Assembly: GCA_965644315.1 (NCBI GenBank)
Contig: CBFFRQ010000089.1
Location: 434,001 to 498,000 of the forward strand
Length of the DNA: 64,000 bases
Direction: 5' to 3'
Source: Caecitellus pseudoparvulus
Taxonomy: Eukaryota; Protista; Bigyra: Bicosoecida
The stretch's first letter is position 1; each line of letters begins with the position of its first letter. The notes under the pieces were generated by a model, which was not told the origin of the DNA, did no database searches, and saw nothing but the letters and a program-made list of their open reading frames with translations. Of this stretch, positions 22,231-64,000 are shown piece by piece. The position numbers were made by a program, and so were the translations under genes.

Positions 22231-24690
22231 ATGGCAGGGAGAAGCACTTTTGGCGTGGTGGAGCCACATGCCTGTGAAGAGCAGGCACAGCCAGGCCTGC
22301 AGGAGCTATCTGACGAGTGCCTGCATGTGGTACTGAGCATGCTGTCAGCGGGGGACTTGCTGCGGTTGGGCTGTGTCAACTGGGAGTGGCTTTCTCGGGC
22401 AGACGACCAGAGGATTTGGCTGCCCCTGCTCATGCAGGACTTTCGCGTCAAGTGCCACGTCTCAGCACTGACGCCAACCGATGCGTCCAAGAGGCACAGC
22501 GAAGATGCTGCAGACGTCTCCAGTGTCATCTCTGTAGGGGGCGCGAAGCAAGCGTACAAAGCTGCTATGAGAGCGCACCAGGAGAAAGTGCGGGAATTGA
22601 TGCGAGACCTGCAGCGGCAGCACAGGGAGGAGCTCCAGGAGCGCGTCAAAGACCTCACGGCCACACACCCCTTCCTCACACTCACACCCCGTGCACTCTG
22701 GCAAGACGCATGGTCGCTCCCCGACATCCAAGTGACCGCCACACGGCTCCAGCTTGCCGTTGCCGCCTTCCTCGCCATCGCCCTAATGTGCACCTTCGGC
22801 GTGACAGGCGCCTGCTTCACCCTGGCACAAGGCGCTCTGCTGCTCGTCAGCAACGCCGCCCTCATCATCAACATCCTCGCCATCGCGGAGGACCGGCCAC
22901 GAGTCACTCTGCGCTCATACCTGCTGCGTTTCCTCCTCCACACTGGCCTCTTCCCGTCCCTCACACACGCCCTGGAGTCCATGACTGACCGCACCCTACG
23001 ACTGGCATTCATCGCTGCACTGTGCTGGCACATCCCACTGACACTGCTCACCCACTTCCTGCCCGCCGGACTGTCCACCTCCAACCCCGTCTCCCTCCTC
23101 CTGCAAACCTTCATACTGTGCCTGCTGCCCATCCGGTGGGGGAGCCTGGTCGCCCTCGTCCTCCTCTGCATCGACCAAGGCGAGACAGCGTGGAGGCGAG
23201 GCATCTCGAGCATTGACTCAGATGCACAGACAGCCGGCAAGCTTGCCTGTGGCGGCCTGCTTGCCTCCCAGCTCGGCCTCATGCTGCACATGCTCCTGAC
23301 AGGCGGCTACCCTTCCATGTCACACGACCTGCTGCCCGCCCTGTGGCAGGCTCTGCAAGTCATCTGTGTCGCAGTCATCGTCGTGGCAGGCGGCCTGCTC
23401 GCCGGCATGGCGTCAGCCCACTACACCCGGGTGTGGTGGGATCGCAACCGCGCCATCATCGAGACGTGGACCAGTGCGGATGTGCATCGGTCTCCCCTGC
23501 AGGCCATGGACCGTGGCGAGCGGTTCTACATCTCCACGGACTTCAAAGAGCTTGCCGGCGTCGGGGGTGTTGCCGCAGGCGTGCTGGCAGTGGGGCACTT
23601 CGCACTGCTGCCGCTCCTGGACTGGTTTGGACTGCTGCATGCCCCTGCTGCGCCGTACATGCTCCTGCACGCCGCTGCGGCAGGCGAGCAGCTGCTGCAA
23701 GCGTACCGCCTCATCGCCATGGTCATCTTGCTGTGCACAGTCGCTGTGTGGCTGCTGTGCTCGTACTGCTCGTGGCTGCTGGCGGCGGTGGGGGAGCGAC
23801 CCCCCCCTGGCTGGCTGCAGCACATTCAGCTCATCGGGCTGCCCATTGCACTGCTGGTGTGGTGGGGGGGTGAGTGGCTGGCACTGGCCACTGGTGCAGG
23901 GCCGCTGGCTGTCATGGACCCTGCCACACACATCGGCACTGTGCGGTTGGTGATGCCGACTGACCCCGTGATGGACTTCGTGGGTGACGCACTGTACACT
24001 ATGTTGTTGAGTGTGCCGTACTGGGTTGTGACAGTGGGTGTGCCGGGTGTGTGTTGGGGTGTGGTGTTGGCGGTGTACTATGTCCTGGCGCTGCCGCTGT
24101 ACTGTGTTGGAGCGGCACTGTGGCAGGCTCAAGCTAGTGTGGCTTCCATCGTGGGAGCTTCAGATGCCTTGGCTGTGTCACCCGTGCAGGTGTGCTGGGA
24201 TGTCTACTCGCCGCTCGCCATCGCAGGCAGGCTGTGGGGAGCCATCACACACGCCACCTGGGTGCTGACCAGCCTGTGCCTGGGCGAGGCATGGGGGGCG
24301 TGGCTGGTCGGTTGGAGTCCAGGTGTGTCCGCGGCGAGCACACTGCCGAGCAACGTGACGCCAGTAGTGTGTGTGTGGGCACGTGTGGCTGGTGCGGGCG
24401 TGGCGGCATGTCCGCCCATACCGGAACCCATGTGTTTCGGAGATGACACCGTGGCTGCATCCCCAACGCTGGACGGTGAGGGCAGCAGCTGGTGGTCTTG
24501 GGTGTGGTGGGCTTGCATCATTGTGTCCAGCGCCTTGGTCGTGGTGGGTGTGGCACTAGCCTTGCGCAAGGTGCTAGACAGCCGTGGGCCACGGCGAGTG
24601 CGCCGACCCGGCCGTGGACACCGGCAACGTGAAGCCCGCCTGCCCGAGAGAGAAGCACCACAGACCAGGCACCGAGTGCGGGCGCGTTGA
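22231..24690 (+). CDS. F-box-containing polytopic membrane protein, tandem copy 1
   Basis: F-box-like LQELSDECLHVVLSMLSAGDLLRLGCVNWEW..IW, short coiled coil, then more than 10 hydrophobic stretches and a basic C-terminal tail. Intronless. Confidence 0.8.
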   Translation: MAGRSTFGVVEPHACEEQAQPGLQELSDECLHVVLSMLSAGDLLRLGCVNWEWLSRADDQRIWLPLLMQDFRVKCHVSALTPTDASKRHSEDAADVSSVISVGGAKQAYKAAMRAHQEKVRELMRDLQRQHREELQERVKDLTATHPFLTLTPRALWQDAWSLPDIQVTATRLQLAVAAFLAIALMCTFGVTGACFTLAQGALLLVSNAALIINILAIAEDRPRVTLRSYLLRFLLHTGLFPSLTHALESMTDRTLRLAFIAALCWHIPLTLLTHFLPAGLSTSNPVSLLLQTFILCLLPIRWGSLVALVLLCIDQGETAWRRGISSIDSDAQTAGKLACGGLLASQLGLMLHMLLTGGYPSMSHDLLPALWQALQVICVAVIVVAGGLLAGMASAHYTRVWWDRNRAIIETWTSADVHRSPLQAMDRGERFYISTDFKELAGVGGVAAGVLAVGHFALLPLLDWFGLLHAPAAPYMLLHAAAAGEQLLQAYRLIAMVILLCTVAVWLLCSYCSWLLAAVGERPPPGWLQHIQLIGLPIALLVWWGGEWLALATGAGPLAVMDPATHIGTVRLVMPTDPVMDFVGDALYTMLLSVPYWVVTVGVPGVCWGVVLAVYYVLALPLYCVGAALWQAQASVASIVGASDALAVSPVQVCWDVYSPLAIAGRLWGAITHATWVLTSLCLGEAWGAWLVGWSPGVSAASTLPSNVTPVVCVWARVAGAGVAACPPIPEPMCFGDDTVAASPTLDGEGSSWWSWVWWACIIVSSALVVVGVALALRKVLDSRGPRRVRRPGRGHRQREARLPEREAPQTRHRVRAR

Positions 24691-25014
24691 GATGGCAAGG
24701 TACAGCGCATGCCAAGGTTCAATACATGTATACGCGACGTGCTGCAGTGCACTTGTGCTCGCACCTGTCAACTCCAACTCCCCCCCCCATCTCCAACTAC
24801 CATGCACTTTGAGGTGCCGAGGCAGGCGCCGCTGGCTTGCTCGAGCCACAGTCCACGTAGAGCCCGAAGCGACACTCTTCATACCCTGCCACCCTTGGGT
24901 GGGGTGTACCCTGTGTGATCAGACTGCTGAAAGCACAGGAGGTCGAGCTGCCGCCCCTACCTGTCCGCTGCTGGCCCTCCAAGTGCGCAGACCAGCCAGC
25001 GCTGGTTCTTGGAA

Positions 25015-27474
25015 ATGGCAGGGAGAAGCACTTTTGGCGTGGTGGAGCCACATGCCTGTGAAGAGCAGGCACGGCCAGGCCTGCAGGAGCTACCTGACGA
25101 GTGCCTGCATGTGGTACTGAGCATGCTGTCAGCGAGGGACTTGATGCGATTGGGCTGTGTCAGCAGGGTTTTTCGGTCGCGTGCAAGTAAAAAGGAAACT
25201 TGGCTGCCGCTGCTCATGCAGGACTTTCGCGTCGATTGCCACGTCTCGGCACTGACGCCTACCGATGCGTCCAACAGGGCCGCTGAAGCGGCTAGATATG
25301 TCTCCAGTTTTGTTTCAACGCGAAGCGCCAAGAGAGCGTACAAAGCTGCCATGAAGGCGCACCAGGAGAAAGTGCGGGAATTGATGCGAGACCTGCAGCG
25401 GCAGCACAGGGAGGAGCTCCAGGAGCGCGTCAAGGACCTCACGGCCACACACCCCTTCCTCACACTCATACCCCGTGCACTCTGGCAAGACGCATGGTCT
25501 CTCCCTGACATCCAAGTGACCGCCACACGGCTCCAGCTTGCCGCTGCCGCCTTCCTCGTCATCGCCCTCATGTACACCTTCGGCGTGACAGGCGCCTGCT
25601 TCACCCTGGCACAAGGCGCTCTGCTGCTTGTCAGCAACGCCGCCCTCGTCATCAACATCTTCGCCATCGCGGAGGACCGGCTGCGAGTCATTCTGCGCTC
25701 CCACCTGCTGCGTTTCCTCCTCCACACTGGCCTCTTCCCGTCCCTCACACACGCCCTGGAGTCCATGACTGACCGCACCCTCCGACTGGCACTCATCGCT
25801 GCACTGTTCTGCCACATCCCACTGACACTGCTCACCCACTTCCTGCCCGCCGGACTGTCCATCTCCAACCCCGTCTCCCTCCTCCTGCAAACCTTCATAC
25901 TGTGCCTGCTGCCCATCCGGTGGGGGAGCCTGGTCGTGCTGGGCGCCCTCTACATCGACCAAGGCGAGTGGGTATGGTGGCGAGGCATCTCGAACATGAG
26001 CCCGGAAGCACAGACAGCTTGCAAGCTTGCCTGTGGCGGCCTGCTTGCCTCCCAGCTCGGCCTCATGCTGCACATGCTCCTGACAGGCGGCTACCCTTCC
26101 ATGTCACACGACCTGCTGCCCGCCCTGTGGCAGGCTCTGCAAGTCATCTGCGTCGCAGTCATCGTCATGTCAGGCGGCCTGCTCGCCGGCATGGCGTCAG
26201 CCCACTACATCCGGGTGTGGTGGGAGCGCAACCGCGCCATCATCGAGACGTGGACCAGTGCTGATGTGCAGCGGTCTCCCTTGCATGCCATAGACCGTGG
26301 CGGGCAGTTCTACAACACCTCCGACTTCAATCACCTCGTCAGCATGTATATTATGGCGACAGGTGTGTTGGCAGTGGGGCACTTCGCACTGCTGCCGCTC
26401 CTGGACTGGTTTGGACTGCTGCACGCCCCTGCTGCGCCGTACATGCTCCTGCACGCCGCCGCGGCAGGCGAGCAGCTGCTGCAAGCGTACCGCCTCATCG
26501 CCATGGTCATCTTGCTGTGCACAGTCGCTGTGTGGCTGCTGTGCTCGCACTGCTCGTGGCTGCTGGCGGCGGTGGGGGAGCGACCCCCCCCTGGCTGGCT
26601 GCAGCACATTCAGCTCATCGGGCTGCCCATTGCACTGTTGGCGTGGCTTGGAGGTGAGCGGCTGGCGCTGGCCACTGGTGCAGGGCCGCTGGCTGTCATG
26701 GACCCCATGACATACTTCGGCACTGTGCGGTTGGTGATGCCGACTGACCCCGTGATGGACTTCGTGGGTGATGCGCTGCACACGGTGTTGTTGAGTGTGC
26801 CGTACTGGGTTGTGATGGTGGGCGTGCCGGGTGTGTGTTGGGGTGTGGTGTTGGCGGTGTACTATGTCCTGGCGCTGCCGCTGTACTGTGTTGGGGCAGC
26901 ACTGTGGCAGGCTCAAGCTGGTGTGGCTTCCATCGTGGGAGCTTCAGATGCCTTGGCTGTGTCACCTCTGCAGGTGTGCTGGGATGTCTACTCGCCGCTC
27001 GCCATCGCAGGCAGGCTGTGGGGAGCCATCACACACGCCACCTGGGTGCTGACCACCCTGTGCCTGGGCGAGGCATGGGGGGCGTGGATGGCCGGTTGGA
27101 GTCCAGGTGTGTCCGCGGCGAGCACAGTGCCGAGCAACATGACGCTTGCGATGTGTGTGTGGGCACGGGTGGCCGGTGCTGGTCTAAGCTCGTGTCCCCC
27201 ACTGCCAGTACCCATGTGTTTCGGTGATGACCCCGTGGCAGCATCCCCAGCGGTGGAAGGTGAGGGCAGCAGCTGGTGGTCTTGGGTGTGGTGGGCTTGC
27301 ATCATCGTGTCCAGCGCCTTGGTCGTGGTGGGCGTGGCACTAGCCTTGCGCAAGGTGCTGGACAGCCGTGGGCCACGGCGAGTGCGCCGACCCGGCCGAG
27401 GACGCCGGCAACGTGAAGCCCGCCTGCCCGAGAGAGAAGCAACACAGACCAGGCACCGAGTGCGGGCGCGTTGA
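25015..27474 (+). CDS. F-box-containing polytopic membrane protein, tandem copy 2
   Basis: LQELPDECLHVVLSMLSARDLMRLGCVSRVF..TW. Same length as copy 1, offset by 2784 bp. Confidence 0.82.
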   Translation: MAGRSTFGVVEPHACEEQARPGLQELPDECLHVVLSMLSARDLMRLGCVSRVFRSRASKKETWLPLLMQDFRVDCHVSALTPTDASNRAAEAARYVSSFVSTRSAKRAYKAAMKAHQEKVRELMRDLQRQHREELQERVKDLTATHPFLTLIPRALWQDAWSLPDIQVTATRLQLAAAAFLVIALMYTFGVTGACFTLAQGALLLVSNAALVINIFAIAEDRLRVILRSHLLRFLLHTGLFPSLTHALESMTDRTLRLALIAALFCHIPLTLLTHFLPAGLSISNPVSLLLQTFILCLLPIRWGSLVVLGALYIDQGEWVWWRGISNMSPEAQTACKLACGGLLASQLGLMLHMLLTGGYPSMSHDLLPALWQALQVICVAVIVMSGGLLAGMASAHYIRVWWERNRAIIETWTSADVQRSPLHAIDRGGQFYNTSDFNHLVSMYIMATGVLAVGHFALLPLLDWFGLLHAPAAPYMLLHAAAAGEQLLQAYRLIAMVILLCTVAVWLLCSHCSWLLAAVGERPPPGWLQHIQLIGLPIALLAWLGGERLALATGAGPLAVMDPMTYFGTVRLVMPTDPVMDFVGDALHTVLLSVPYWVVMVGVPGVCWGVVLAVYYVLALPLYCVGAALWQAQAGVASIVGASDALAVSPLQVCWDVYSPLAIAGRLWGAITHATWVLTTLCLGEAWGAWMAGWSPGVSAASTVPSNMTLAMCVWARVAGAGLSSCPPLPVPMCFGDDPVAASPAVEGEGSSWWSWVWWACIIVSSALVVVGVALALRKVLDSRGPRRVRRPGRGRRQREARLPEREATQTRHRVRAR

Positions 27475-27838
27475 GATGGCAAGGTACAGCGCATGCCAAG
27501 GTGCAATTCATGTTCTCGCGACGTGCTGCAAGGCACTCGTGCTCACCCCTGTCAACACCAACTACCCCCTCCCATCTCCAATTGCCATGCACTCTCCAAC
27601 ATGCACCAAAGCCATTACATGACACACTCCGAAGCCTTAACACACCCCTTCTCCAACCCCGCTTCCAAGCAAAAGCACAGAGTGTGCCAAGCACGGCCTT
27701 CGCGCGAGTGCTTGCCACAGTCTCCAACCAAGCAGCAACCACCAAACCTGTGAGATCATCGCAGGAAAGACCACTTTCCAAAGGCACACACTTTTCAGCA
27801 ATCTAAGCGCGCAGACCAGCCTGCGCTAGCTCTGGGAA

Positions 27839-30424
27839 ATGGCAGGAAGGAGCTGCATAAGCGCGATCCCTCAAGATGCTGAAGGGCAGGCACGTCCCAA
27901 CACCCAGGACATTGACCGCGCTCCCCAAGCTGCCTCGAGTGGCGCCGACTCCAATGGGGACCTGATACGCGCAGCCTGTGCAGACGATTCAACAAATCGG
28001 TGGAAACGCTTTGCACAAGAGCGCCCGTACCTTGAACACCTCGCGCACTTGAGCGCGAGAGCAGCCAAAGTCAAGCTACTGAAGGAGGCCACAGCTGCTG
28101 TGGACTTCTTCGGACCTGATGTGTTCATGGAGACCCGTGTGGAAGGACCGTCACAGGCTTTGTTGTCCAAACAGAAGCAGAAGACTGAACCTCAACAAGA
28201 AACAGCGCACTGCGCAACACACCACAACATCGAAGACCTCACGGCCACACACCCCTTCCTCACACTCATACCCCGCGCTCTCTGGCAAGACGCATGGTCG
28301 CTCCCTGACATCCAAGTGACCGCCACACGGCTCCAGCTTGCCGTCGCCGCCTTCCTTGCCATCGCCCTCATGTGCACCTTCGGCGTGACAGGCGCCTGCT
28401 TCACCCTGGCACAAGGCGCTCTGCTGCTCGTCAGCAACGCCGCCTTCTTCGTCCTCATTGCCATCGTTGACAGAAAACATGGTTTGTGCTTTTCCCGTTC
28501 CATTGGCCTCTTCCCGTCCCTCACACACGCCCTGGAGTCCATGACTGACCGCACCCTCCGACTGGCATTCATCGCTGCACTGTGCTGCCACATCCCACTG
28601 ACACTGCTCACCCACTTCCTGCCCGCCGGACTGTCCACCTCCAACCCCGTCTCCCTCCTCCTGCAAACCTTCACACTGTGCCTGCTGCCCATCCGGTGGG
28701 GGAGCCTGGTCGTGCTGGGCGCCCTCTGCATCGACCAAGGCGAGACAGCGTGGAAGCGAGGCATCTCGAGCATTGACTCAGATGCACAGACAGCTTGCAA
28801 GCTTGCCTGTGGCGGCCTGCTTGCCTCCCAGCTCGGCCTCATGCTGCACATGCTCCTGACAGGCGGCTACCCTTCCATGTCACACGACCTGCTGCCTGCC
28901 CTGTGGCAGGCTCTGCAGGTCATCTGTGTCGCAGTCATCGTCGTGGCAGGCGGCCTGCTCGCCGGCATGGCGTCAGCCCACTACACCCGGGTGTGGTGGG
29001 ATCGCAACCGCGCCATCATCGAGACGTGGACCAGTGCTGATGTGCAGCGGCCGCCCCTGCAGGCCATGGACCGTGGCGAGCGGTTTTATGACTCCTCCGA
29101 CTTCAATCACCTCACCAACATGTACATGATGGCGGCTGGTGTGTTGGCGGTGGGGCACTTCGCACTGCTGCCGCTCCTGGACTGGTTTGGACTGCTGCAT
29201 GCCCCTGCTGCGCCATACATGCTTCTGCATGCCGCCGCGGCAGGTGAGCAGCTGCTGCAAGCGTACCGCCTCGTCGCCATGGTCATCTTGCTGTGCACAG
29301 TCGCTGTGTGGCTGCTGTGCTCGCACTGCTCATGGCTGCTGGCGGCGGTGGGGGAGCGGCGCCCCCCTGGCTGGCTGCAGCACATTCAGCTCATCGGGCT
29401 GCCCATTGCACTGCTGGCGTGGTGGGGGGGTGAGTGGCTGGCGCTGGCCACTGGTGCAGGGCCGCTGGCTGTCATGGACCCCATGACATACTTCGGCACT
29501 GTGCGGCTGGTGGTGCCGACTGACCCGGTCATGGACTTCGTGGGTGATGCGCTGCACACGGTGTTGTTGAGTGTGCCGTACTGGGTTGTGATGGTGGGCG
29601 TGCCGGGTGTGTGTTGGGGTGTGGTGTTGGCGGTGTACTATGTCCTGACGCTGCCACTGTACTGCGCAAACTCGTACCTCCTGCATCTTGTGACTGAAGG
29701 GTCGCAGGGGGGAGCAGCTGCTGCTTTCCAGCTATCGTCACCTCTGCAGGTGTGCTGGGATGTCTACTCGCCCCTCGCCATCGCAGGCAGGCTGTGGGGA
29801 GCCATCACACATGCCACTTGGCTGCTGACCACCCTGTGCCTGGGCGAGGCATGGGGGGCGTGGATGGCTGGCTTGAGTCCAGGTGTGTCCGCGGCAAGTA
29901 CACTGCCGAGTAACGTGACGCCAGTGATGTGTGTGTGGGCACGAGTGGCTGGTGCGGGCGTGGCGGCATGTCCGGCGCTCCCTTCCTTTCCCTGCTACTG
30001 GGACGATGGGCCGTTCACTTGTCTGGCGGCAATGCCCTCTGATATGTGCCTGGACGGGATTGAAGTGGCATTGGAAGACTTTCCTCAGCCATCCACAGCC
30101 CCGGATGCACTTGCCCTCGGGTTTCCTCCGGCAGGTCCTGTCACACCTGCCATGTGTGTGTGGGCAAGAATCTCGCGAGCTTCACTGGGAACTTGCCCAC
30201 CTCTTCCCAAGCTGCAGTGCGGTGCAGATGAGCCACTTGAATCACAGGGTACGCGGTTGCCTGAGCATTGGATACCACCGCTGCTGAAGCGACTAGCACT
30301 CGTCATTTGTATCTCCTTGTCGATGCTTGGCATCCTATACTTCACATGCATGCTGCTACTGCTGTGCGCAATAGATAGCTTCCCGTACATGAGAAGAAGA
30401 GCCCGGCCAAAGAGAAAGGACTAG
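27839..30424 (+). CDS. Polytopic membrane protein, tandem copy 3; F-box region replaced and C-terminus divergent
   Basis: Near-identical to copies 1/2 from DLTATHPFLT (~28235) to ~29975. The N-terminal ~130 aa and C-terminal ~150 aa are unrelated or divergent. Confidence 0.8.
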   Translation: MAGRSCISAIPQDAEGQARPNTQDIDRAPQAASSGADSNGDLIRAACADDSTNRWKRFAQERPYLEHLAHLSARAAKVKLLKEATAAVDFFGPDVFMETRVEGPSQALLSKQKQKTEPQQETAHCATHHNIEDLTATHPFLTLIPRALWQDAWSLPDIQVTATRLQLAVAAFLAIALMCTFGVTGACFTLAQGALLLVSNAAFFVLIAIVDRKHGLCFSRSIGLFPSLTHALESMTDRTLRLAFIAALCCHIPLTLLTHFLPAGLSTSNPVSLLLQTFTLCLLPIRWGSLVVLGALCIDQGETAWKRGISSIDSDAQTACKLACGGLLASQLGLMLHMLLTGGYPSMSHDLLPALWQALQVICVAVIVVAGGLLAGMASAHYTRVWWDRNRAIIETWTSADVQRPPLQAMDRGERFYDSSDFNHLTNMYMMAAGVLAVGHFALLPLLDWFGLLHAPAAPYMLLHAAAAGEQLLQAYRLVAMVILLCTVAVWLLCSHCSWLLAAVGERRPPGWLQHIQLIGLPIALLAWWGGEWLALATGAGPLAVMDPMTYFGTVRLVVPTDPVMDFVGDALHTVLLSVPYWVVMVGVPGVCWGVVLAVYYVLTLPLYCANSYLLHLVTEGSQGGAAAAFQLSSPLQVCWDVYSPLAIAGRLWGAITHATWLLTTLCLGEAWGAWMAGLSPGVSAASTLPSNVTPVMCVWARVAGAGVAACPALPSFPCYWDDGPFTCLAAMPSDMCLDGIEVALEDFPQPSTAPDALALGFPPAGPVTPAMCVWARISRASLGTCPPLPKLQCGADEPLESQGTRLPEHWIPPLLKRLALVICISLSMLGILYFTCMLLLLCAIDSFPYMRRRARPKRKD

Positions 30425-51878: not shown

Positions 51879-52232
51879 ATCCCAGCGCAGGCTGGCACAG
51901 GTCAAAGGGGACGGAAAGCACGCAAAGGAGCGTGGTGTTCATGCAACATACTTCAACGCAATTCTTCCCGGCGTGAGAGACGTGGTGCACACGCAGGGCT
52001 CGACCCTGCACCTGCATCAGCCTTGGCGGGCGGTGCGGGAAAAGCCAGCGCAGGCCATCACGACAGAACTGGGGCACGCTCCCACCTCAGGCAAAATGAC
52101 CCCGTCACCCAACTAAATGCATCAATGCATGCACTGTGTTTGCATGCATCTGGCAGGTGATCGCCTGTTCGCTCGATTTTCCACGGCGTTTGCGTGGGAT
52201 TGGGCGCAACGACCGACCCTGCAACTTCGACC

Positions 52233-55200
52233 ATGAAGCTGCTCAGCACGATGCTCCTGCTGGGGGCACAAGCTGCACTTGTGTACGGCCAGACTCCCAC
52301 AAACTGTCCCTTTGGATGGTCGGTGTCAGACATCGGAGGGCAGGGCCACTTCTGCTACAAGTGCGTTCGGCGTGCTGCACTGTCAGCGTTTCCCTGCCCG
52401 CGCACTGCTCCGTCGAACGTGGCCTGCGATTGCCCTCGACGGGCGGGCTGTCGTCCCTCTTCACACATGGGAATGCCGGAACTACGTTTGTTTGCTCGGT
52501 CGATGTCTTGCCGCACCTCACGCTGTCTCCATCCCACGCCACAGGTTGGTGCAAGCTCAGCAGCCTTGGCAGACCGCTGAATCCGACTGTGTCGCCCAGG
52601 GAGGGCACCTTGCCTCCGTCTGGAACGAACAAGAACGAGATCTCATCTACACTCTCTGCTCGTGCGTGCGCCAGTGCCCCGTCTGGCGCCGGCACTCCGC
52701 CATGAGCGCCTTGCGCCGCGTCACTTCCTTGTTGCGCCGCCGCCATGCACAGGGCTTCTCCGAGCAACCAGTGCTGGACTGGAGGTAATGACCGATCAAC
52801 TGAGGGCACATGGAGGTGGTCCGATGGCAGCTCGCGGTCTTACATCAACAGCTTCTGGTCCTCCGGCCAGCCCGACAACATGGGGGTGTGTTGGTGCTGC
52901 GACGTGCTGGTGCTCTGGTTCAGCACCCAACACTGCGATGCTCCCGCCCCCCTCGGCACAGAACCAAGACTGCCAAGTCATGTGGGATGCAGAGGATCCA
53001 GAGGCCTCCGCGGACGACCTCGGCTGTGGCTCCGCTCGAGACTACATCTGCAAGATGCCTGGTGCGTGCCGGGACTGCTTCCCACGCTGCTCCTCAGCCT
53101 TGCACACACCAGTCGCCCCCCACTCCCTCTCGCAGCTGGCTGCCCACCTGGTAGCTACAAGAGCGGCAACTCCTGTGTGGGCTGCCCGGCCGGGCGATAC
53201 TCCCCCAGCATCCTGAACACCGGGGTGGGTGGCTGCCTCGGCTGTGACCCCGGCCGGTACGGCTCCACCACGGGCCTCACCACACCGCTGTGCACGGGCA
53301 AGTGTGCCAACGGGCACTACTGCCCCAGTGGCTCATCCACCTCTGCCAACGCATTCAACTGCCCCGCGGGAAGGTACGGCCTGACCCCAGGGGGCGCGTC
53401 CCACGGCCTGGGATCAGCAGCTTGCTCTGGGAACTGTGCTGCTGGCTGGTACTGTGGCGTGGAAGAGACGTCCAGCACACCCGCAGGCCAGCAGTGCCAG
53501 CCGGGGTTCTATGGAGTGGGCGGCGAGAGCACTCCCACCTGCGCTGGCATGTGCCAGGCCGGCTACTACTGCACTGCCGGCTCGCCCCGTGCCGACCAGA
53601 ACGCCTGCGGTGCTGAGGACAAGTTCTGCCCTGAAGGCTCCAGTGCACCCCAGGATGTGGACGTGGGGCACTACTCCACCCCCACTAGCTCCCCCGTCAC
53701 CACTCGTTCAGGCCAGGCTGTGTGCGAGGCAGGGTACTACTGTGCCAACGGCCGCCGCACCGGCTGCCCTGCTGGCCGTTACTCTGGCGCTATTGCCGCC
53801 ACATCCTCAGCTACCTGCAGTGATTGTGACCGTGGGTTCTTCTGCCCTCTGGCATCAACGCAGCCCACTGAGACGCCCTGTGGCGCCGCACAGCCCGCGG
53901 GCCAAGAGGCGGCCGTGTACTGCCCAGCAGGCACCAGCAGCCGTCTGGCTGTGCCTCCTGGACACCAGAGTCTGCCGGCGGATGCCCCCGTGGACCAGCG
54001 CTGGGACACCCGGCCTTGCCCTCAGGGCCACAACTGCATCTTCGGCATCGCGTACCCCCTCATCCAGTTCACCAGCGGCTGCACCACCCCCGCACCTGCC
54101 CAAGGCCCTTTCCCTGGCTCCACCTTCACTGGCACCCTGTTCGTGGACGAGAACCAGCCGTTCCTGTTCAACCTGGACTACGTGGACCAGGACCCTGGCG
54201 TGGCGCCGGTGTTCCAGGGCGCGCGGCCACTGTCTGGCTTCCAGTACGGGGCGGCATGCCCTGGACAGGCCACCTTCGGAACCGCCTTCACCTCCACCCC
54301 CGTCACGACGAACCCTCTCAACGGGCAGCTGCGCATCGAGCTGCCCAGCGCAGGCTTCAACTACGAGGGCTGCGAGGTGGCCGGCGTGGACTTCGTGTAC
54401 GAGCAGGGCGGCTTCGAGTACACCTGCCGCATGATGATTACAGTGGAGAACGTGAATGACGCACCGCAGTTCCTGCCTGACTCGGCCGTGCGGTCCATTG
54501 AGGAGAACTCCAAGGTGGGCGTGCCAGTGGGCCCCCGTGTGCCGGCGCTGAACGAGGACGACGGCCAGGAGCTCGCCTTCAGCATCATCCCCTCCAGCGA
54601 CCCGTACGGGTACTTCTCCATCTCCGTCTGCTCCGGGCAGATCTTCGCGGCGGTGAGCGACATCTCTTACGAGCAAGCGCTCTGCTCGCCACTGCCCTTC
54701 GTGGACCTGCAGGTGGAGGTGGTGGACAACGGCATCCCCCCCCGCTCCGCCATCCGCACGGTGCGTGTGAACATCATCAACATCAACGAGCCCCCTGTCT
54801 TCCTCACCACCACCGGCACGGCCGAAAATGACAACCTGGGCTATGGCTTCCAGGTGTCTGAGGACGTCACCGTGCCGCACATGGTGGGCGTCGCGGCCGC
54901 CATGGACCCTGACTGCCTGCCCCTCACATGGTCCCTGGAGCAGCGCAACGGGCAGGCCAACTTCAAGAGCAACCCTGAGTTCACCATCGCGCCCGGGACA
55001 GGCTCCATCTCAGCGGTGCGGGCCCTGGACTACGAGTCTGTGGAGGAGTACGCCTTCACCCTGCGCGTGCAAGACCAGTTCCCGCTGGGTGTGCCTGGGT
55101 TCGAGGTGCCCCTCAGCAACGAGCTGGTGATTGAGGTCTTGGACGCCAACGACGCGCCGGCGGTCACGGCAGTGAACCTGAACGTGCCCGAGGATGCCCA

Positions 55201-58200
55201 GATCGGCGACCCCGTCAACGGCTACATCCTCATCACGGACCCCGAGACCAACCCGGGCCGGGCAGCCGTCACGTCGGTTGTCACCTCCGGCCCCAACTCA
55301 AACATGTTCACGGCAGTGCCCCTGGCACCCGGCGCCGGCGGCTCACCCGCCAACGTCACCGCCTATGGACTGGAGGTGCTGGTGGCAGGGTTCGACTTCG
55401 AGACTGCGTCCAGCTACACCTTCCAAGTGACGGTGACGGATGTGGGCGTGGGGCACCCCGACGCCTCCACCACCATCACCGTCACTGTGCAGATCACTGA
55501 CGTGAACGAGCCGCCCATCTTCCCTGTCGGTGGTCCCATGCCCTTCGAGGTGTTCGTGCCTGAGAACACCATCGCTGGCACACGCCTCCTGGCTCAGGCC
55601 CTGCAGTACACGGAGCCCGACGTCGGCCAAACCGCCGACTTCCTGGTCCGCAACTACACCTCCACGTTCGACGTGGACGCCGTCAGCGGAGTCCTGCGCT
55701 TGACGCAGAACGTCCTGAACTACGAAGCGCAGAACCAGTACGGCCTTGTGCTGTCGGCACAGGACAAGGGAGTGCCCGCGCTGTCCACGGATGCCACCCT
55801 GGCTGTGCACGTCACCAACGTGAACGAGCCCCCCTCTGTGGTGCCAGGCCAGGTCTTCACAGTGCCTGAGAACCACCCCGCCGGCGCCGTCATTGGCTCA
55901 GTCATCGTGGCAGACCAGGACTCCCTCATCCCCGCCGAGGGGGAGGTGCACACCTGGACCCACCTGGCTGGTGAAGGTCTGCACAACCCCCGTGCGTACT
56001 TCGTCTCCGGCGGCACACAGTTCCTGGGCATCGACCTGTTCAAGGTGAACTCCTCCACCGGCGAGGTGCGAGTGAACGATGGCGTGAACACGGACGTGTG
56101 GACCAGCCTGTTGGACTTCGAGGACATCCAGGAGTACACCGTTGAGGTGTTCGTGCACGACGCTGGCATCGCGGGTGGCCCAGTGTTCAACGCCTCAGGC
56201 ACCTTCAAAGTTCAACTCACCAACGTGCAAGAGGCGCCATTGCTGGTGCCACGCCCTGACGGCTCAGCCCAGGTGCGCGCGGTGGCCGAGTCGGCGCCCA
56301 GCGGCACGAACGTGGGCCCACCTCTGCAGATCCTGGACCAGGAGAACCAGACGTACTCTTGTGCGTTCGTGACCCCCACAACGGAGTGGTCCTTCGCCCC
56401 TGGCCCCGGTTGCCAGGTGCAGGCGGCACAGCCGGTGCAGACGCTGAGTGGGGCACAGCCTGAGCCGCTCACCCGGGAGTACACCATCTCCATCAACGAC
56501 ACGGGATCCCCCCCCCGCACGACAACGACCATTCTGAACATCACCATCGCAGACAACAACCAGTACCCTGTCTTCTCGGACCACGCTGTGTCTGTGCGAG
56601 AGGATGCTCCCTTGGACTCCATCGCTGGAGACGTCGGCATGGCATCCTACGTGACGGACGTGAACACTGACCAGACCCACCAGTTCTTCATCCTCTCTTT
56701 CGACCCCGTGAACACCAACACCTGGTTCTACATCGCCGCCGACAACATCAACGCAGGCAACATCTCTGTGGGTGCGCCGCTGAATTACGAGGCGCACCCC
56801 TCTGTCACACTGGGCGTGCAGACACAGGACAACGGCAAGGGTGGCGGCCTCACAGACACAGCCACGTGGACTGTGAACCTCTTGAACGTGAACGAGCCCC
56901 CTTCCTGGATCGCCCAGGCTCCCATCTCCTTCCCCGAGACTGTGTTGGGCGGCTCCACTGTCGGGCAGACCATCGGCAGCGTGTCCTGGCAGGACGAAGA
57001 CAGCACATCTGGGGATTCCTGGACAGTGTCCATCGCCCCCAGCACCGCGGACCCCGCGCCCGTCTACTTGGCGGTTGACAACAGCGGCAGCATCACCATC
57101 GCACAGCCTGTCGACCACGAAGCCCATGGCACCCTGTCCTACAACTTCACAGTGTGCGACTCTGGCAACGCGCTGCCTCCGCCTGGTGTCGCGCCGGGCA
57201 CCCCCCTCTGTGCGTCCGCTGTCTTTGACTTCATCGTGCAGGACGTGAACGAACCGCCCACCGTGGTGGCCAACACCCTGCTGGTGGAGGAGGCGTCGGC
57301 GCCCGGCGCCACTCTGAAGATGGAGGTGAACGGCAGCAACCCCCTGCCTGCTCTCATCACCTGGTCCGACCCGGATGACCCCTCCACGCCTTTCGGGCAG
57401 GTGACCTTCTCCATCATCGCGGGGGATGCCGTGCACTTTGTCGTGTCCAACACCGGCTACGTGCAGCTGGCCCAGGTGGTGGACTTTGAGAACCTGCAGC
57501 AGCACACCTTCACCGTGCAGGTGGAGGACAACCCTGGCGGTTCTCCTCGTTTCTCTGACTCTGCTGTGTACACAGTGCAGGTAGTGGATGACAACGACCT
57601 CACCGGGGCAGTGTACAATGGAGGCGGCCAGCTGGTGCACCCCACCACTGGCACCTCTGACCATGTCGTCTTCTTCAACGGCACGAACATGGGCCCCACC
57701 CAGTCGTGGCTTGCCTCCGCGTCAGGCGCCAACCCCTCCCTGAGCAGCCTCATCGAGTACAAGGCCTTCGTGTCCTTCAGCACTTCCCCTTCCCAGCCCT
57801 ACCCTCCCACCGGCTCCCCCACCAACACCAAGGAGGTGACTTGTGTCAGCATCACAGCCAACACGGCCATCGCCTGCGCCGTGCCCTCTGGTGTGGGGCG
57901 GCTGACGTGGCAGCTGCAGACCCGCGTGCCCCTTGTGGATGCGTCCTGGAGTGTCATTCCCGGTCAATTCTCTACCCAGGTGTACACTGCCCAGGGCACG
58001 ACAGATTACGCCGCGCCATCCGTGACAGGTGTGGTGCTGGCCTCTGGCCAGCTGTCTACGACTGGTGGACAGTCAGTGGTCATTACGGGCACGAGCTTGG
58101 GCCCAGCCGACACGCAGTACGAGAATGGCGATGTCCGGTACGGTGTGGCGGAGCCGTACTTCGTGGCTGAGTCTTGCACCGTGACGACGGCGCACACTCA

Positions 58201-61200
58201 GCTGACCTGCCAGACCCAGGTGGGTGTGGGGTCAGACATGTTCATCCTGCTGCGCACTGGTGGCAAGGGCGCCTCCCCGTCGCCCTTCACGCCCTCCAAC
58301 CCTGCCATGTCCTACGGCCGCCCTGCCATCTCCTCTGTCACTGTGTGGCGTGCCGGCATGCAGCAGCCCAAGCTGGCCACCGCTGGCGGTGACACCATCC
58401 GCATCATCGGCAGCAACTTCGGCCCTGCCCGCCTGCTGCTGGCCAATAACAACGGCGTGACGCAGGACATGCCTGTGGTAGTGGAGGTGGAGTACGGCCT
58501 GCCCCGCGGGGAGGACTTGACCTACCCTGGCAGCAGCCCCATGCGCTTCCAAGCCCTGGCCTGCACGCACAACGTCGCCCCCCACACTCAGATCAACTGT
58601 CTGGCTCCTCCAGGCACCGGCGGCAACCTCGTCGTCCGTGTCGCCGTCAAGGTCACCTACCCCGGCGGTGCCCAGGAGTTCCAATACTCCCAGCTCACCA
58701 ACACCACTGTCGTGTCATACCAGGGCCCGCTCCTGGACCAAGTCACGGGCCCCGGCTCGCGGCAGGGTGGCACCCTTGGAAACGAGCTCATCCGCGTCAT
58801 TGGCCGCAACTTTGGCGCCGTGACACCAGTCATGGGCTCCAACGGCGGCTTCTCTTGCACCACCGCGGCCGACCCCAACCAAGTGACGGCTGCAGACATC
58901 CCCATTGTTCGATACGGCCGCCCTGGGACTGGTCAGCGCCGCTTCACTGCGCGGTACTGCATCGTGAAGTCCGACTCTGTGATTGAGTGCTGCAGTGCCC
59001 CGGGCACTGGTGCTCAGTTCGAGTACACCGTGGAGCTGGATGGGCAGGTGTCCCCTGCGCACTACGAGCCCGAGAGCGGGTACCACCCGCCTGTGGTGAC
59101 TGGGTACCTCAACGCTGATGCCACTGGCCCCGCTGAGCTGTCCCCCACGCCAGGTGATGCCGTGGTGGTGCTGCAGGGTGCCAACTTCGGTGACGGCACG
59201 CAGTGGATCGACAGTGTTGAGTACGGCAAGGACGGGCAGAAGGACTACGACGCCTCCAACTGTGCCATGGTGCCCGGCTACCTGCACACGCGCATCCAGT
59301 GCCGCACGGTGCAAGGCGCTGGGGCGGGCCTGTCCTGGACCGTCACTGTGGACGGCCTGGAGAGCGAGGCGCCGTCCACGAGCTACGGCCCCCCCGTCAT
59401 CACTGGCTTCGCAGGGGCAGCAGCTGTCAACGCCAGCACGCTGGGTGGGCAGGTGGTGGAGCTGCTGGGGTACAACTTTGGCCCCCAGATGGGCGAGGTG
59501 TCCAATGAGGTCCCCGCCGGCCCTGGCTCCGTGAACAAGACGCACACCTTCCTGGACTGGGTGAGGTATGGCCCAGTCACCGGTGAGGAGTACCGCCCTG
59601 ACAACTGCACGGTCTTGTCGCACACGCGCATCTCCTGCGTCACCAAGCCAGGCTCGGGCAAGGACCACACGTGGACTGTGCGTGTGGAGGGCCGCACTGG
59701 CCCAGGGTCTGCCGTCAAGTGGTCCTACGCTGCCCCCGTGCTGAGCGGCATCACGACGCCGCCTGCTGGTGTGCCCACCACCGGCGGTGTCCTGGGCGCG
59801 CTGCAAGGCACCAACCTTGGCACCCAGGACCCCCTTGCATCCGCCTATGTCCAGATTCGCCTCGCCAAGGACGGCGGTGCTGTCATCCGCGCAGAAGTGC
59901 AAAGCATGAGCGTCCTGCCTGGCGGCCTGGAGCAGGTCACATTCTTTTTCCCTGAAGGGTATGGCTTCCACGCCCAGGCACGCCTGGTGGTGGACGGCGC
60001 CCAGCTGCAGTACTCCAACTTCATCTCCTTCAATTACGCCGCTCCCATCTGGTCTGGGTACAAGGTGCGCGGGGACACGCTGGCGGCTTTCGTGCGTGTG
60101 GAGGCGCTGGGCGAGAACTTCGCCGCAGGCCCCATCAACAACGCCGGTTTCCCAATCGCCCGTCTGTTCAACGGCCCCTTTGAGGTGCCGGCCGAGAACA
60201 TCCTGTCTTGGGACCACACCCGCCTGGAGTTCAAGCTGCTGCGGCCTTCCTCTGGCAGCAGCGGTGCTGGCGCGGGGGAGTCCCACGTTCCCGTGGACAT
60301 CCAGGTGTTCAAGGCGACTGAGGAGGTGCCCATCATGCAGGATGTCACGACCACTGTGACCGACAACGTGACCACCTTCGTGAACGGCACTGCTACCTGG
60401 CAGATTGTCTCGTACAACGTCACCACGCAGGTGCCCACCGGCAACAGCAGCGTGGAGGATGTGTACCACGAGGCATCCCGATCTGTAGAGATGGAGCCGC
60501 CTTCCTTCGCCTCCCGTGAGAGCATCTCGTCAGAGCCCCTGGACACTGCCGGTGGTACACGCATCCACTTCCAGGTGCGGGGCATCACGAACAACACCGC
60601 AGACTTGGACGTGTTCGTCGGACCGGGGACCCTGCTGTACGGACCAGCGGACGGCTACGCCAGCACCACGCCACGGTACCGCGACAACCGCTGCACCGAC
60701 CTCGCCATCACATACTGCCTGGAGGATGCAGCTGCGCTGGCCGTGTGCTGTGACGGGGCACCTGGCTGTGTCGCTGCAGATCGCGAGGACACGTTCTACG
60801 TCGAGTGCACTGCGCCAGCAGGGCAAGGCACTCGCAACCGCCTGCGTGCAGTGTTTGCTACTGGCGCCGATATCGGGCTGGGCAGCAGCAACTCCTCAGC
60901 AGACCAAGTGTACATGGAGTACAAGCAGCCCATGATTGACGACATCACCTTCACCACCAGCTCCGGGGCCCTGTCTGGCCGTGCCCTGCAGAGCGGCACC
61001 GTCGTGAACGGGCTCGTGGACAAGGCTGGCCTGCGCGAGACTGGGACGGTGCGTGACAATGGGCGCAACGAGCTGGCCTTCATCTTCAACATGCCCACGG
61101 ACACGGCGTACCTGCACATTGCCGGTGCCAACCTGGGCATGTCTGCCGGCATGAAGGTGATTTCCCCTGGTGGCCTTCCCGGCGCCACAGACGACTTCAT

Positions 61201-64000
61201 GCCCCGGCCCTCAGGGCCCGGCGCCAGCTTGAACCCTTCTCACACTCTGGCTGCGGTGGCAGTGCCGCCCGGCATCAACGGCCTGTCTCTGTCAGACGAC
61301 CGCATCATGGAGTTCCAGGTGTGTGATACGTACGGCTGTGGCCAACTGGCGGATGTGTCTGGGCAGATCGGCTCCCTGAACTTCACCGCGCAGCAGTACA
61401 ACACGGACATCGGCGCAGGGGACCCGCCTGCCACGTGCCGTGATGTCGGCTGCACGGGTGTCGGCCGCCGCATCTCCTTCACCTACGCCGCACCTGTCCT
61501 GTTCAAGGGCACTGTGAAGCTGCCCACCACTGGTGGTGCAGCCCTGGCCCTCAACGGCGCAAACTTCGGACCTGCCTCCCTTGCCAGTGCCGTGTCAGTC
61601 ACCGTGGCTGGGCAAGCCTGCCCTCTGCGCCTGACCCCCGGCGGCGACCGCATGGTCAACCCTGGCGCCTCACCTCACAACCAGATTGTGTGCGACATGC
61701 CCCCTGGGGTTGGCGCCAGCATGGATGTGTCTGTCACGGTTGGCAGCCAAACTGTGTCGGTGCCCTCCGGGACAGACCCCGACTTCAGCATCGGGTACCT
61801 GCCTCCCCGCGTGTTCAACATGTTCCCACGCACTGGGCCCACCAACGGCGCATTGAACCTGACGCTGACTGGTGAGAACTTTGGCACAGACCCCAGCAAG
61901 GTGGTGGTGCGCCTGCGCTCCAACCCCGCTGACGTCGCTGTGGGCCGTGAGGAGGACGTGGAGTCACCCCTGGTCTCTTTCGTGAACGACACCACCATCG
62001 TCTTCACCCTGCCCGAGGGACAGGGTGGTGCCAAGGTCGTGGAGGTGCTGGCTGGCGGCCAGAGCTCTCTCGTGTCTGCGCTGCAGCCTGCGCCCGCCAG
62101 CGCCTGGCCACCCGCTGCCTACTCCCAGTTCGTCTTCGACTACCTGCCCCCCAGGGTGGCGTCTGTGTCCCCCAACTGCGACACGTTCGGCTGCACCATC
62201 ACCATCCGTGGCGAGAACTTTGGCAAGCGTGACTGCAACGCAGCTGGCCCCGTCACCCGCAACAGCACCGCCGACGACCCCGTGCAGGTGGCTGTGCGTG
62301 TGCGGCAGGGTTCCGACGAGGCCCGCGGCCCAGATGACATGGAGTACAACTGTGTGCCCCAGTGCGCCGGCCACACCCACGACGAGTTCCAGTGCGTCCT
62401 GGACCCCGGCATGGGGCGGGAGCTGGATGTGTATGTGCGCATCGGCAGCAAGGAGGCGCCCATCGACGCCAGCGCCGGCACGTACTCCTATGCGGCCCCC
62501 ATCCTCACCTCCACAGTCAGCTCCTATGTCTCTGCCCGGGGCGCTGTGAACTTGACTTTCTACGGCAAGAGCATGGGCATTCCGGAGCGGTCTCCAGCCC
62601 GCGTCTTCGTGGGTGGCAAGGAGTGCCTGAACGCCACCGTGGCCACCATCGACGCTGCCAACCGTGCCCAGAGCCTCAAGTGCCTGCGTCCCGAGACAGA
62701 CACCATCGGTGCCAAGGAGGTGCGCTTCGAGCTGGCCTTCCAGCCAGAGCAGTCCGTGGCAGCCGCGGACGGTTTGCTGCAGTTCAATTGCCCTGATGGG
62801 CACTACGGCCAGCCTGGCGAGCTCTGCGAGCCTTGCCCCATCGGTGGCGTGTGCGAACCCCATCGCGTGTCCTGCGTACAGTTCATCAACGACACTCGGT
62901 ACGGCACGGAAGTGTGCACGCAGTACATGGCGCCGTACGCGCAGCCAGAGCACTGGCGCCTGACCCTGCCGACACCCAACCGTTTCTGCGATCAGCTGAA
63001 CCGCGGCAACCGCACGTACCCCAACAACGGCACATGCTTCTTCTTCGCCGGGTGCGACCCGCCCAACGCCTGCGCCGGGCGAAACTTGTGCACGGAGGGC
63101 TACAAAGGTGAGCGATGTGGGCAGTGTGTGCTGGGTTTCTTCCGCCTGGATGGTGAGTGCGTGAAGTGCCCCGACCTGGCAGGGCTGTACATCGCTTTGT
63201 TCGTCATCGGCATCCTCGTTATTTGCGCCGGCGGCTACTGGCTGAACAAGCAGAACATCAACCTCGCCTTCATCTCCATCGGCGTGGACTATCTGCAGGT
63301 GCTGGCGCTGTTCGCGCGCACCAAGATTGCCTGGCCTCCCGTCATCAAGAACCTCTTCCGCTTCATGTCCGTCTTCAACCTGAACATCGACTTGGCCGCG
63401 CCCGAGTGCCTGAACCCCGAGATGCAGTATGACGTCAAGTGGGCCGCCATCATGCTGCTGCCCGTCCTCATCGCTTCGGTGTTCTTCCTGGTGTACCTTG
63501 TGAACTACCTGTACAAGCGCTGCATCTTGAAGGTGGCAGCAGAGAAGCGCAACTCCCACATGCCGCAGTTGGTGGGCGTGTGCCTGACCATGTTCTACTT
63601 GCTGTACCTGTACCTCACCCGCACCACCTTTGACATCTTCAACTGCAGCCCCACCAACCCGGATGACGGCTTCCAGTACATGGAGGTGGTCTTCGAGAAG
63701 TGCTGGGAGAGTGACCTGCACAACCGCCTCTTCCCCGGTGCCATCGTTACCCTCATCGTGTATGTCATCGCGTACCCAGTCGGTGTTGGCTACGTCCTGT
63801 ACAGCAACAAGGACACAGTGAAGGTGGACCAGCTGCTGCGCGCGCAGTACCTGGGCGACGAAGCCAAGACCAGCACCCGCACCACGTACAGCTTCCGCAA
63901 GATGGCGGAGAAGCTGTACCGTAACTTCAAGCCTGGCAAGTGGTACTGGCAGGTCATCATTATCGCCCGCAAGTTCTTCATCGCCGTCACGTCCCTGCTC
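52233..64000 (+). CDS. Giant multidomain surface receptor (3'-partial): signal peptide, C-type lectin, Cys-rich repeats, ~10 cadherin repeats, ~13 IPT/TIG repeats, EGF-like Cys region, multi-pass TM domain
   Basis: Exons 52233-52360, 52545-52661, 52753-52885, 52962-53061, then 53136 to the window end in one frame (codons at positions 2 mod 3). The ORF track lists no + ORF in that frame there, consistent with no stop codon. Cadherin linkers include ENVNDAPQF, NINEPPVF, LDYE, DANDAP, DVNEPP. IPT motifs include TTGG..V.ITG.NFG. TM region includes DYLQV..IAWP and YRNFKPGKWYWQVIIIARK. Confidence 0.9.

What the first reader, a model, noticed from the sequence alone, without database searches (positions are those of the whole stretch)
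52233..64000. Hidden giant lectin-cadherin-IPT multi-pass receptor: candidate adhesion or prey-sensing system
Seen: absent from the ORF track because the last ~10.9-kb exon has no stop inside the window. The spliced product is at least ~3,780 aa. Order: signal peptide; C-type lectin (52300-53060); CxxGxY/CPxG Cys-rich repeats (53140-54050); ~10 cadherin repeats with DxNxxP/LDYE Ca2+-binding motifs (~54060-57600); ~13 IPT/TIG repeats (~57600-62780); Cys-rich juxtamembrane region; at least 5 TM helices. Established: cadherins are typical of holozoans and are also reported in some stramenopiles such as oomycetes; protists have large ectodomain + multi-TM families. Inference: a sugar-binding tip on a long Ca2+-stiffened stalk coupled to a polytopic membrane module is adhesion-GPCR/Flamingo-like logic, suited to prey, substrate or partner recognition. 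I do not recognise this exact architecture from any characterised protein.
Basis: partly seen in the sequence, partly recalled or inferred. Interest (0 to 1): 0.85.

Follow-up and report, generated by a model that had tools for sequence, protein, structure and literature searches.

The report
Nine-pass stramenopile cadherin with lectin tip
This real, expressed 4,123-residue surface protein belongs to the already named 'nonagonal' cadherin family of stramenopile protists; what is new is modest: a lectin tip, about 20 copies with differing tips in one genome, and a membrane core related to fungal Pkd2-type and parasite CRMP proteins rather than to GPCRs.

Summary
The gene is real. It has five exons and 4,123 codons, and ends 1,029 bases past the window. 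All four introns appear in one RNA contig. Domain order: signal peptide, C-type lectin, 11 Cys-rich repeats, 10 cadherin repeats, about 13 IPT repeats, Cys-rich neck, nine TM helices (not five or seven), 170-aa tail.

The architecture is not new. The membrane module is 37% identical (E 1e-106) to the giant cadherin of Phytophthora nicotianae. The cadherin-IPT-neck-9TM block is colinear in Phytophthora, Cafeteria, Triparma and Cantina. This matches the nonagonal cadherins (Fletcher 2016, whose text I could not read).

The Flamingo/adhesion-GPCR reading fails: nine helices, no GAIN, no GPCR fold match. The core links to Pfam PF06011 (fungal Pkd2/Flc) and, by eye, to CRMP exocytosis sensors. The genome holds 21 close loci with varied tips, and the lectin sugar motif is not conserved.

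Best model: a contact sensor whose stalk couples tip binding to a CRMP/Pkd2-type signal (inferred). The scan noted such genes elsewhere in this genome before.

The parts
52233..52360 (+). Exon 1: start ATG, predicted signal peptide (about 19-20 aa, by eye), start of the C-type lectin domain
   Evidence: RNA contig begins at 52162 and there is no upstream ATG in it; joint 52360>52545 in 3 runs; translation
52545..52661 (+). Exon 2: C-type lectin, profile positions 2-32
   Evidence: PF00059 E 0.0043; RNA joints
52753..52885 (+). Exon 3: C-type lectin core (WTG motif, QPD motif)
   Evidence: PF00059 positions 37-77, E 0.0046; RNA joints
52962..53061 (+). Exon 4: end of the lectin; canonical WND replaced by ADD
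   Evidence: RNA joints, one run; 48% identical exon in the syntenic orthologue
53136..64000 (+). Exon 5: 11,894 nt in all, continuing to window-equivalent 65029
   Evidence: RNA contigs over most of 53135-58000; 53% identity over 3,862 columns to syntenic orthologue P0001
53138..54052 (+). 11 CxxGx[YF] Cys-rich repeats (ephrin-receptor-like/GCC2_GCC3 type by motif)
   Evidence: motif count; no Pfam hit for this copy, PF07699 E 1.6e-4 in paralogue C47
54104..57613 (+). 10 cadherin (EC) repeats with xE[ND], L/F-D/N-Y/F-E and D/N-x-N-D/E-x-P calcium-linker motifs, some degenerate
   Evidence: PF00028 E 1.6e-57; repeat map; best PDB sequence hit CELSR1 EC repeats, E 3.8e-30
57572..62782 (+). About 13 IPT/TIG repeats with one or two insertions
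   Evidence: PF01833 E 1.7e-23; 12 GxNxG-type and 13 YxxP motifs; 11 by HMM
62789..63178 (+). Cys-rich juxtamembrane neck (EGF/ephrin-like; DUF7630)
   Evidence: six invariant Cys in 58 homologues; PF24633 E 2e-4
63179..64000 (+). TM1-TM6 of the nine-helix module. TM7-TM9 lie at window-equivalent 64013-64471; a 170-aa cytosolic tail follows to 65029
   Evidence: family hydropathy; AlphaFold2 pLDDT 88.6, pTM 0.87; positive-inside pattern gives N out, C in

Best explanation
A nonagonal (nine-pass) cadherin of a marine, probably stramenopile, protist that works as a surface contact sensor. SHOWN: a spliced, expressed gene; an ectodomain of lectin, Cys repeats, 10 EC and about 13 IPT; a conserved Cys-neck + 9TM core with N out and C in; family membership by sequence and colinearity; many paralogues with different tips on one stalk and core. 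INFERRED: calcium stiffens the EC run, so the stalk holds the tip roughly 100 nm from the membrane (assuming about 4 nm per repeat, from general knowledge). The tip binds a surface ligand of prey, substrate or another cell. Load or clustering is passed to the 9TM core, which signals as its relatives do, by Ca2+ entry (fission-yeast Pkd2) or by triggering local exocytosis or engulfment (CRMP), not through a G protein. Odds: family membership about 0.9; contact receptor with signalling output about 0.6; specifically a Ca2+/exocytosis trigger about 0.35.
For:: 37% identity, E 1e-106, to P. nicotianae L916_08084, and HSPs across EC, IPT and TM; that protein has three EC runs (11+26+10), 13 IPT and the same core, fitting 'tri-modular Nonagonal cadherins' (PMC7409359); nine helices. 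PF06011 in 23 of 58 homologues (best E 2e-5); distant in-genome relatives of the module pass the PF06011 cut-off. Atlas fold TM 0.75 and feature score 0.95 to TRP/ephrin-like clusters. Literature: Pkd2 has nine predicted helices and passes Ca2+ on membrane stretch; CRMPs have nine TM plus Cys repeats and trigger exocytosis. Conserved buried polar residues (DYxQ, RKF, NxxE) argue for more than an anchor.
Against: No functional data for any nonagonal cadherin were found. The PF06011 link is weak for this protein itself (no hit at E 0.1) and is transitive. The CRMP link is by eye only. There is no solved structure of the core. PPTG_11709, the gene named as nonagonal in PMC7409359, was not retrieved by name. 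The lectin calcium site is non-canonical and variable.
Confidence: 0.6

Rival explanations
1. Purely adhesive tether or surface-coat protein: the stalk and tip hold prey, substrate or sister cells, and the 9TM core serves only as anchor and trafficking handle.
For: EC and IPT repeats are adhesion modules. Cadherin- and IPT-domain genes are listed under cell adhesion, and cadherin genes rise in starved Cafeteria (PMC7852580; not shown to be this family). Anti-cadherin staining at the zoospore cell perimeter (PMC7409359). No signalling domain in the tail.
Against: The nine-pass core has invariant polar and Cys residues and is much better conserved (35-60%) than the stalk (about 25%). A single helix would do as an anchor.
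Confidence: 0.22
2. Adhesion-GPCR/Flamingo-like receptor that signals through G proteins.
For: The best PDB sequence hit of the EC region is CELSR1, and a Phytophthora homologue is auto-annotated as a seven-pass G-type receptor. Both rest on EC repeats only. CRMPa was called GPCR-like by PANTHER.
Against: Nine helices; the neck is a Cys-rich EGF/ephrin-like module, not GAIN/GPS; no 7tm Pfam hit in the 25 families listed for the 58 homologues; GPCR chains score E about 1-2 and TM below 0.2.
Confidence: 0.05
3. Mechanosensor or flow sensor, for example on flagella or flagellar hairs, in which the stalk is a lever and tip specificity is secondary.
For: Pkd2 is stretch-activated. Named homologues come mostly from lineages with flagellated stages.
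Against: Tip diversity across paralogues suggests ligand discrimination. From memory of Fletcher 2016, the family also occurs in non-flagellated Blastocystis and Aureococcus (not checked here).
Confidence: 0.13

Closest known systems
Nonagonal cadherins of stramenopiles (Fletcher, van West and Gachon 2016, Gene 593:64; cited in PMC7409359 and PMC8164589)
   Same: EC repeats with calcium motifs, nine TM helices, N-terminal putative carbohydrate-binding module. Colinear EC-IPT-neck-9TM block with the Phytophthora giant cadherin.
   Different: One run of 10 EC instead of three runs totalling 47; C-type lectin plus 11 Cys repeats at the tip, where Phytophthora has an F5/8 discoidin domain; about 20 loci here against one or two per genome in the original report (from memory). 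I could not check whether that paper described the IPT array.
CRMPs (cysteine repeat modular proteins) of Apicomplexa and ciliates
   Same: Cys-rich repeats, EGF-like neck and nine TM; N out, C in; lectin-type tips in some. By eye, neck Cys spacing and the TM6 W..ARKF motif match TgCRMPA.
   Different: No EC/IPT stalk reported for CRMPs; they act as A/B heterodimers at rhoptry or mucocyst exocytosis. Homology was not scored here.
Fungal Pkd2/Flc 'TRP-like' family (PF06011)
   Same: Nine predicted TM helices; weak profile and fold links.
   Different: Pkd2 has one short Ig-like ectodomain. Channel activity is shown only for Pkd2. The link to this gene is below the Pfam cut-off.
Flamingo/CELSR adhesion GPCRs
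   Same: Long EC stalk on a multi-pass core; EC repeats are homologous.
   Different: Seven TM, GAIN, LamG and HRM domains are all absent here; the core fold is unrelated.

Membership tests
Nonagonal cadherins | Tandem extracellular cadherin repeats with calcium-binding motifs | tested here: met
   10 EC, PF00028 E 1.6e-57, linker motifs tallied
Nonagonal cadherins | Nine transmembrane passes | tested here: met
   hydropathy over 58 homologues, AF2 model, positive-inside pattern
Nonagonal cadherins | Homology of the membrane module to the oomycete tri-modular cadherin | tested here: met
   37% identity, E 1e-106, to P. nicotianae L916_08084; the longer allele has three EC runs
Nonagonal cadherins | Direct match to a sequence named in the literature (PPTG_11709; Fletcher's gene models) | tested here: inconclusive
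   PPTG_11709 not returned by name; the paper is not held
Nonagonal cadherins | Putative carbohydrate-binding module at the N-terminus (from memory of the abstract) | tested here: met
   C-type lectin exons; binding itself not testable
Nonagonal cadherins | Stramenopile host | tested here: inconclusive
   Named homologues are stramenopiles apart from two likely contaminated assemblies; 18S is 1,697 nt but could not be classified
Adhesion GPCR / Flamingo | Seven-helix GPCR fold | tested here: not met
   nine helices; no Foldseek or VIA match
Adhesion GPCR / Flamingo | GAIN domain with GPS before TM1 | tested here: not met
   neck is Cys-rich DUF7630/ephrin-like; no GAIN or GPS Pfam hit
Classical cadherins | Single TM and catenin-binding tail | tested here: not met
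   nine TM; no Cadherin_C hit in the tail
PF06011 Pkd2/Flc | Profile score above the curated cut-off | tested here: not met
   no hit for this protein; weak hits in 23 of 58 homologues; distant paralogues pass
PF06011 Pkd2/Flc | Ca2+ permeation on stretch | not testable with these tools
   needs reconstitution
CRMP | Scored homology of the neck + 9TM core | not tested
   The CRMP sequence has no tool reference, so it was compared by eye only
Ca2+-dependent C-type lectin | EPN/QPD plus WND calcium-site motifs | tested here: inconclusive
   QPD present, WND replaced by ADD; QPD absent in the orthologue; EPN in paralogue C30

The most novel reading that the evidence does not exclude
Nonagonal cadherins, CRMPs and fungal Pkd2/Flc are one ancient non-GPCR, nine-pass receptor superfamily. 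In this free-living protist it has expanded into a repertoire of about 20 long-stalked receptors with swapped tips (galactose- and mannose-type lectins, Sib/integrin-beta-like domains) that tell prey apart and trigger Ca2+-dependent capture, perhaps as heterodimers encoded by head-to-head gene pairs. I found no paper in the held library that links these families.
Probability: 0.25. Interest if true: 0.65.

Novelty: new member of a known kind. Interest (0 to 1): 0.32.

Why it matters
The locus itself adds one member to a named but functionally unstudied family. The wider pattern is of more use. How bacterivorous protists recognise prey is an open question, and a variable-tip, constant-core receptor family with relatives in culturable Cafeteria and in Phytophthora gives testable candidates. 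If the core is the CRMP/Pkd2 module, it also supplies a mechanism (contact to Ca2+ or exocytosis) that the nonagonal cadherins appear to lack so far.

Tried and rejected
1) Fletcher 2016 is not held by DOI or PMID; details from it are from memory and marked so.
2) PPTG_11709 could not be retrieved by name. PPTG_14933 in the same cluster is only a 141-aa match to the N-terminus.
3) PDB sequence, Foldseek and VIA searches of the 9TM core gave nothing significant; best Z 8.7 was to a small helical bundle.
4) Split genes or an antisense artefact were rejected: RNA links the lectin exons to exon 5, GC3 is 0.83, and the orthologue is continuous.
5) GPCR and classical-cadherin membership were rejected.
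6) The host could not be named from 18S.
7) The tree is the quick version only; the careful search did not finish and deep branches are unresolved.
The CRMP sequence had no reference and was not scored.
10) RNA was laid only on 52100-58000.
Full report
Observation. The window is G000:C89:434001-498000 of a 30.6-Mb, GC-rich eukaryotic genome. One + strand frame is open from 52706 to the window end and stops at window-equivalent 65027-65029. Four GT..AG introns (184, 91, 76 and 74 nt) give five exons, 12,372 nt and 4,123 aa. A marine metatranscriptome contig spans 52162-53402 and carries all four joints; joints 1 and 2 each recur in two other runs, and RNA contigs cover most of the stretch up to 58000, the limit tested. 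So the lectin exons and the giant exon are one transcript. A syntenic orthologue (DNAJC9 upstream, a zinc-type dehydrogenase/quinone reductase downstream) is 53% identical over 3,862 columns and keeps the lectin exons.

Anatomy. Signal peptide (by eye). C-type lectin over exons 1-4, with two exons hitting PF00059 in order at E about 0.004 each. Eleven CxxGx[YF] repeats. Ten cadherin repeats with mostly intact calcium-linker motifs (PF00028 E 1.6e-57). About 13 IPT repeats (E 1.7e-23; 11 by HMM, 12-13 by motif). A Cys-rich neck with six invariant cysteines. Then nine TM helices: family-averaged hydropathy shows nine peaks plus one amphipathic helix after TM2, AlphaFold2 models them at pLDDT 88.6 and pTM 0.87, and basic residues fall on alternate loops as expected for N out and C in. 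The 170-aa tail has no catenin-binding or enzyme domain.

Relatives. The membrane module finds 78-86 giant proteins per search, most with cadherin and TIG domains, and 1,225 cluster representatives at E 1e-30 or better. Named ones come from Phytophthora, Cafeteria, Triparma/Tetraparma and Cantina, plus single hits in Batrachochytrium and Symbiodinium assemblies that I take for contamination (inference). P. nicotianae L916_08084 is 37% identical over the module, E 1e-106, and aligns along the EC and IPT regions too. Its longer allele reads discoidin - 11 EC - insert - 26 EC - Cys - 10 EC - 13 IPT - neck - 9TM. That fits the 'tri-modular Nonagonal cadherins' that PMC7409359 reports for P. parasitica, citing Fletcher et al. 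2016; PMC8164589 names the same family, and oomycete cadherins with true calcium motifs were reported in 2010 (PMC2926784). I could not read Fletcher's text or retrieve PPTG_11709 by name, so the last link rests on architecture and species. From memory of the abstract, the family is defined by nine passes, has a short single-run subclass of 3-12 EC, and carries putative carbohydrate-binding domains; this gene fits that subclass.

The family in this genome. Twenty-one loci match the module at E 1e-34 or better, and some 35 more match weakly. Twenty of the 21 have cadherin hits in the same open frame. Three pairs look like recent duplicates or haplotigs, leaving about 18 distinct genes. The ten paralogues fetched share stalk and core but differ in EC number (2 to 54) and tip: C-type lectins in C18, C30 and two C32 genes, Sib/integrin-beta-like domains in C29 and weakly C47. 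In the quick tree the genome's copies fall in several groups, the nearest to this gene being its syntenic orthologue and C30; oomycete copies form one clade, and deep order is unresolved. The lectin motif varies: QPD here, none in the orthologue, EPN in C30, and WND is missing. Ligand specificity may therefore differ among copies, but sugar binding is not established.

What the core is. It is not a GPCR: nine helices, no GAIN/GPS, no 7tm Pfam hit, and no PDB fold match. CELSR1 tops the PDB sequence search only through EC repeats. Instead PF06011 (fungal Pkd2/Flc) hits 23 of 58 homologues weakly; distant in-genome relatives pass its cut-off; and the Atlas returns TRP/ephrin-like clusters at TM 0.75 and feature score 0.95. 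Fission-yeast Pkd2 has nine predicted helices and passes Ca2+ when the membrane is stretched (bioRxiv 2022.08.11.503631, PMC9727806). Toxoplasma CRMPs have Cys repeats, an EGF-like neck and nine TM, form A/B heterodimers and trigger exocytosis on host contact (PMC9815656, PMC9670195). By eye, the TgCRMPA core in that paper's table shares the neck cysteine spacing and the TM6 W..ARKF motif; this was not scored because the sequence has no tool reference.

Mechanism. Most likely a plasma-membrane contact sensor: a calcium-stiffened stalk holds a variable tip far from the cell, and binding or pull is passed to a conserved nine-pass core that signals through Ca2+ or local secretion. Gene structure, expression, architecture, topology and family are shown; ligand, location and output are inferred (0.6 for a signalling contact receptor, 0.35 for Ca2+/exocytosis specifically). 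Rivals: passive tether (0.22), flow or mechanosensor (0.13), G-protein receptor (0.05).

Verdict. The claim of an unrecognised architecture fails, since this is a new member of the nonagonal cadherins. The lectin tip, the expansion with swapped tips and the link to CRMP/Pkd2 cores are the parts worth following. Earlier scan notes flagged similar genes, one as 'Nonagonal-like', elsewhere in this genome; my note of that family predates reading them, and they are not counted as support. Interest 0.32.

Noticed in passing
G000:C20:28487(-)/64801(+) and G000:C68:861844(-)/898153(+): Diverged paralogues of this family sit head to head, and the two pairs look like duplicates of each other. CRMPA/B are TM heterodimers, so these could be partner subunits.
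   Followed up: no
G000:C94:54109-80000 (L026-L029): Paralogue with an 8,657-codon open frame and 54 EC repeats in three runs, as large as the oomycete tri-modular form.
   Followed up: partly
G000:C69:876893, C32:474260, C57:290089 (probably also C37:82302, C68:96716): A divergent subgroup; in the first three, TM8-9 match several hundred bases further on, implying a large cytosolic insertion between TM7 and TM8.
   Followed up: no
L018:5729-9997 (G000:C29): The paralogue's tip matches Dictyostelium Sib/integrin-beta-like domains (PF24907 E 2e-9, PF24908 E 2.6e-12).
   Followed up: partly
   Followed up: partly
window 22036-29974 (+): Three tandem copies of an approximately 2.8-kb gene, about 90% identical in DNA; two have an N-terminal F-box.
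   Followed up: partly
G000:C43, C68, C89, C44, C66: Many other giant open frames (3,000-8,000 codons) carry arrays of C-type lectin domains: a large lectin repertoire.
   Followed up: no
G000:C69:862262-867916: Tandem near-identical cadherin repeats (about 670-nt period) in short frames upstream of a paralogue; either a repeat expansion or an assembly artefact.
   Followed up: no
L014:1501-3197: The 18S rRNA gene is short (1,697 nt), in a tandem array on C81; a weaker, divergent SSU match lies on C213.
   Followed up: no
P0068 (KAH9252082.1), P0159 (CAE7945039.1): Family members labelled Batrachochytrium salamandrivorans and Symbiodinium. The latter clusters at 90% with Cafeteria proteins, so both are probably stramenopile contamination.
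   Followed up: no
window 91-6996 (+): 2,301-codon ORF with no Pfam hit.
   Followed up: no
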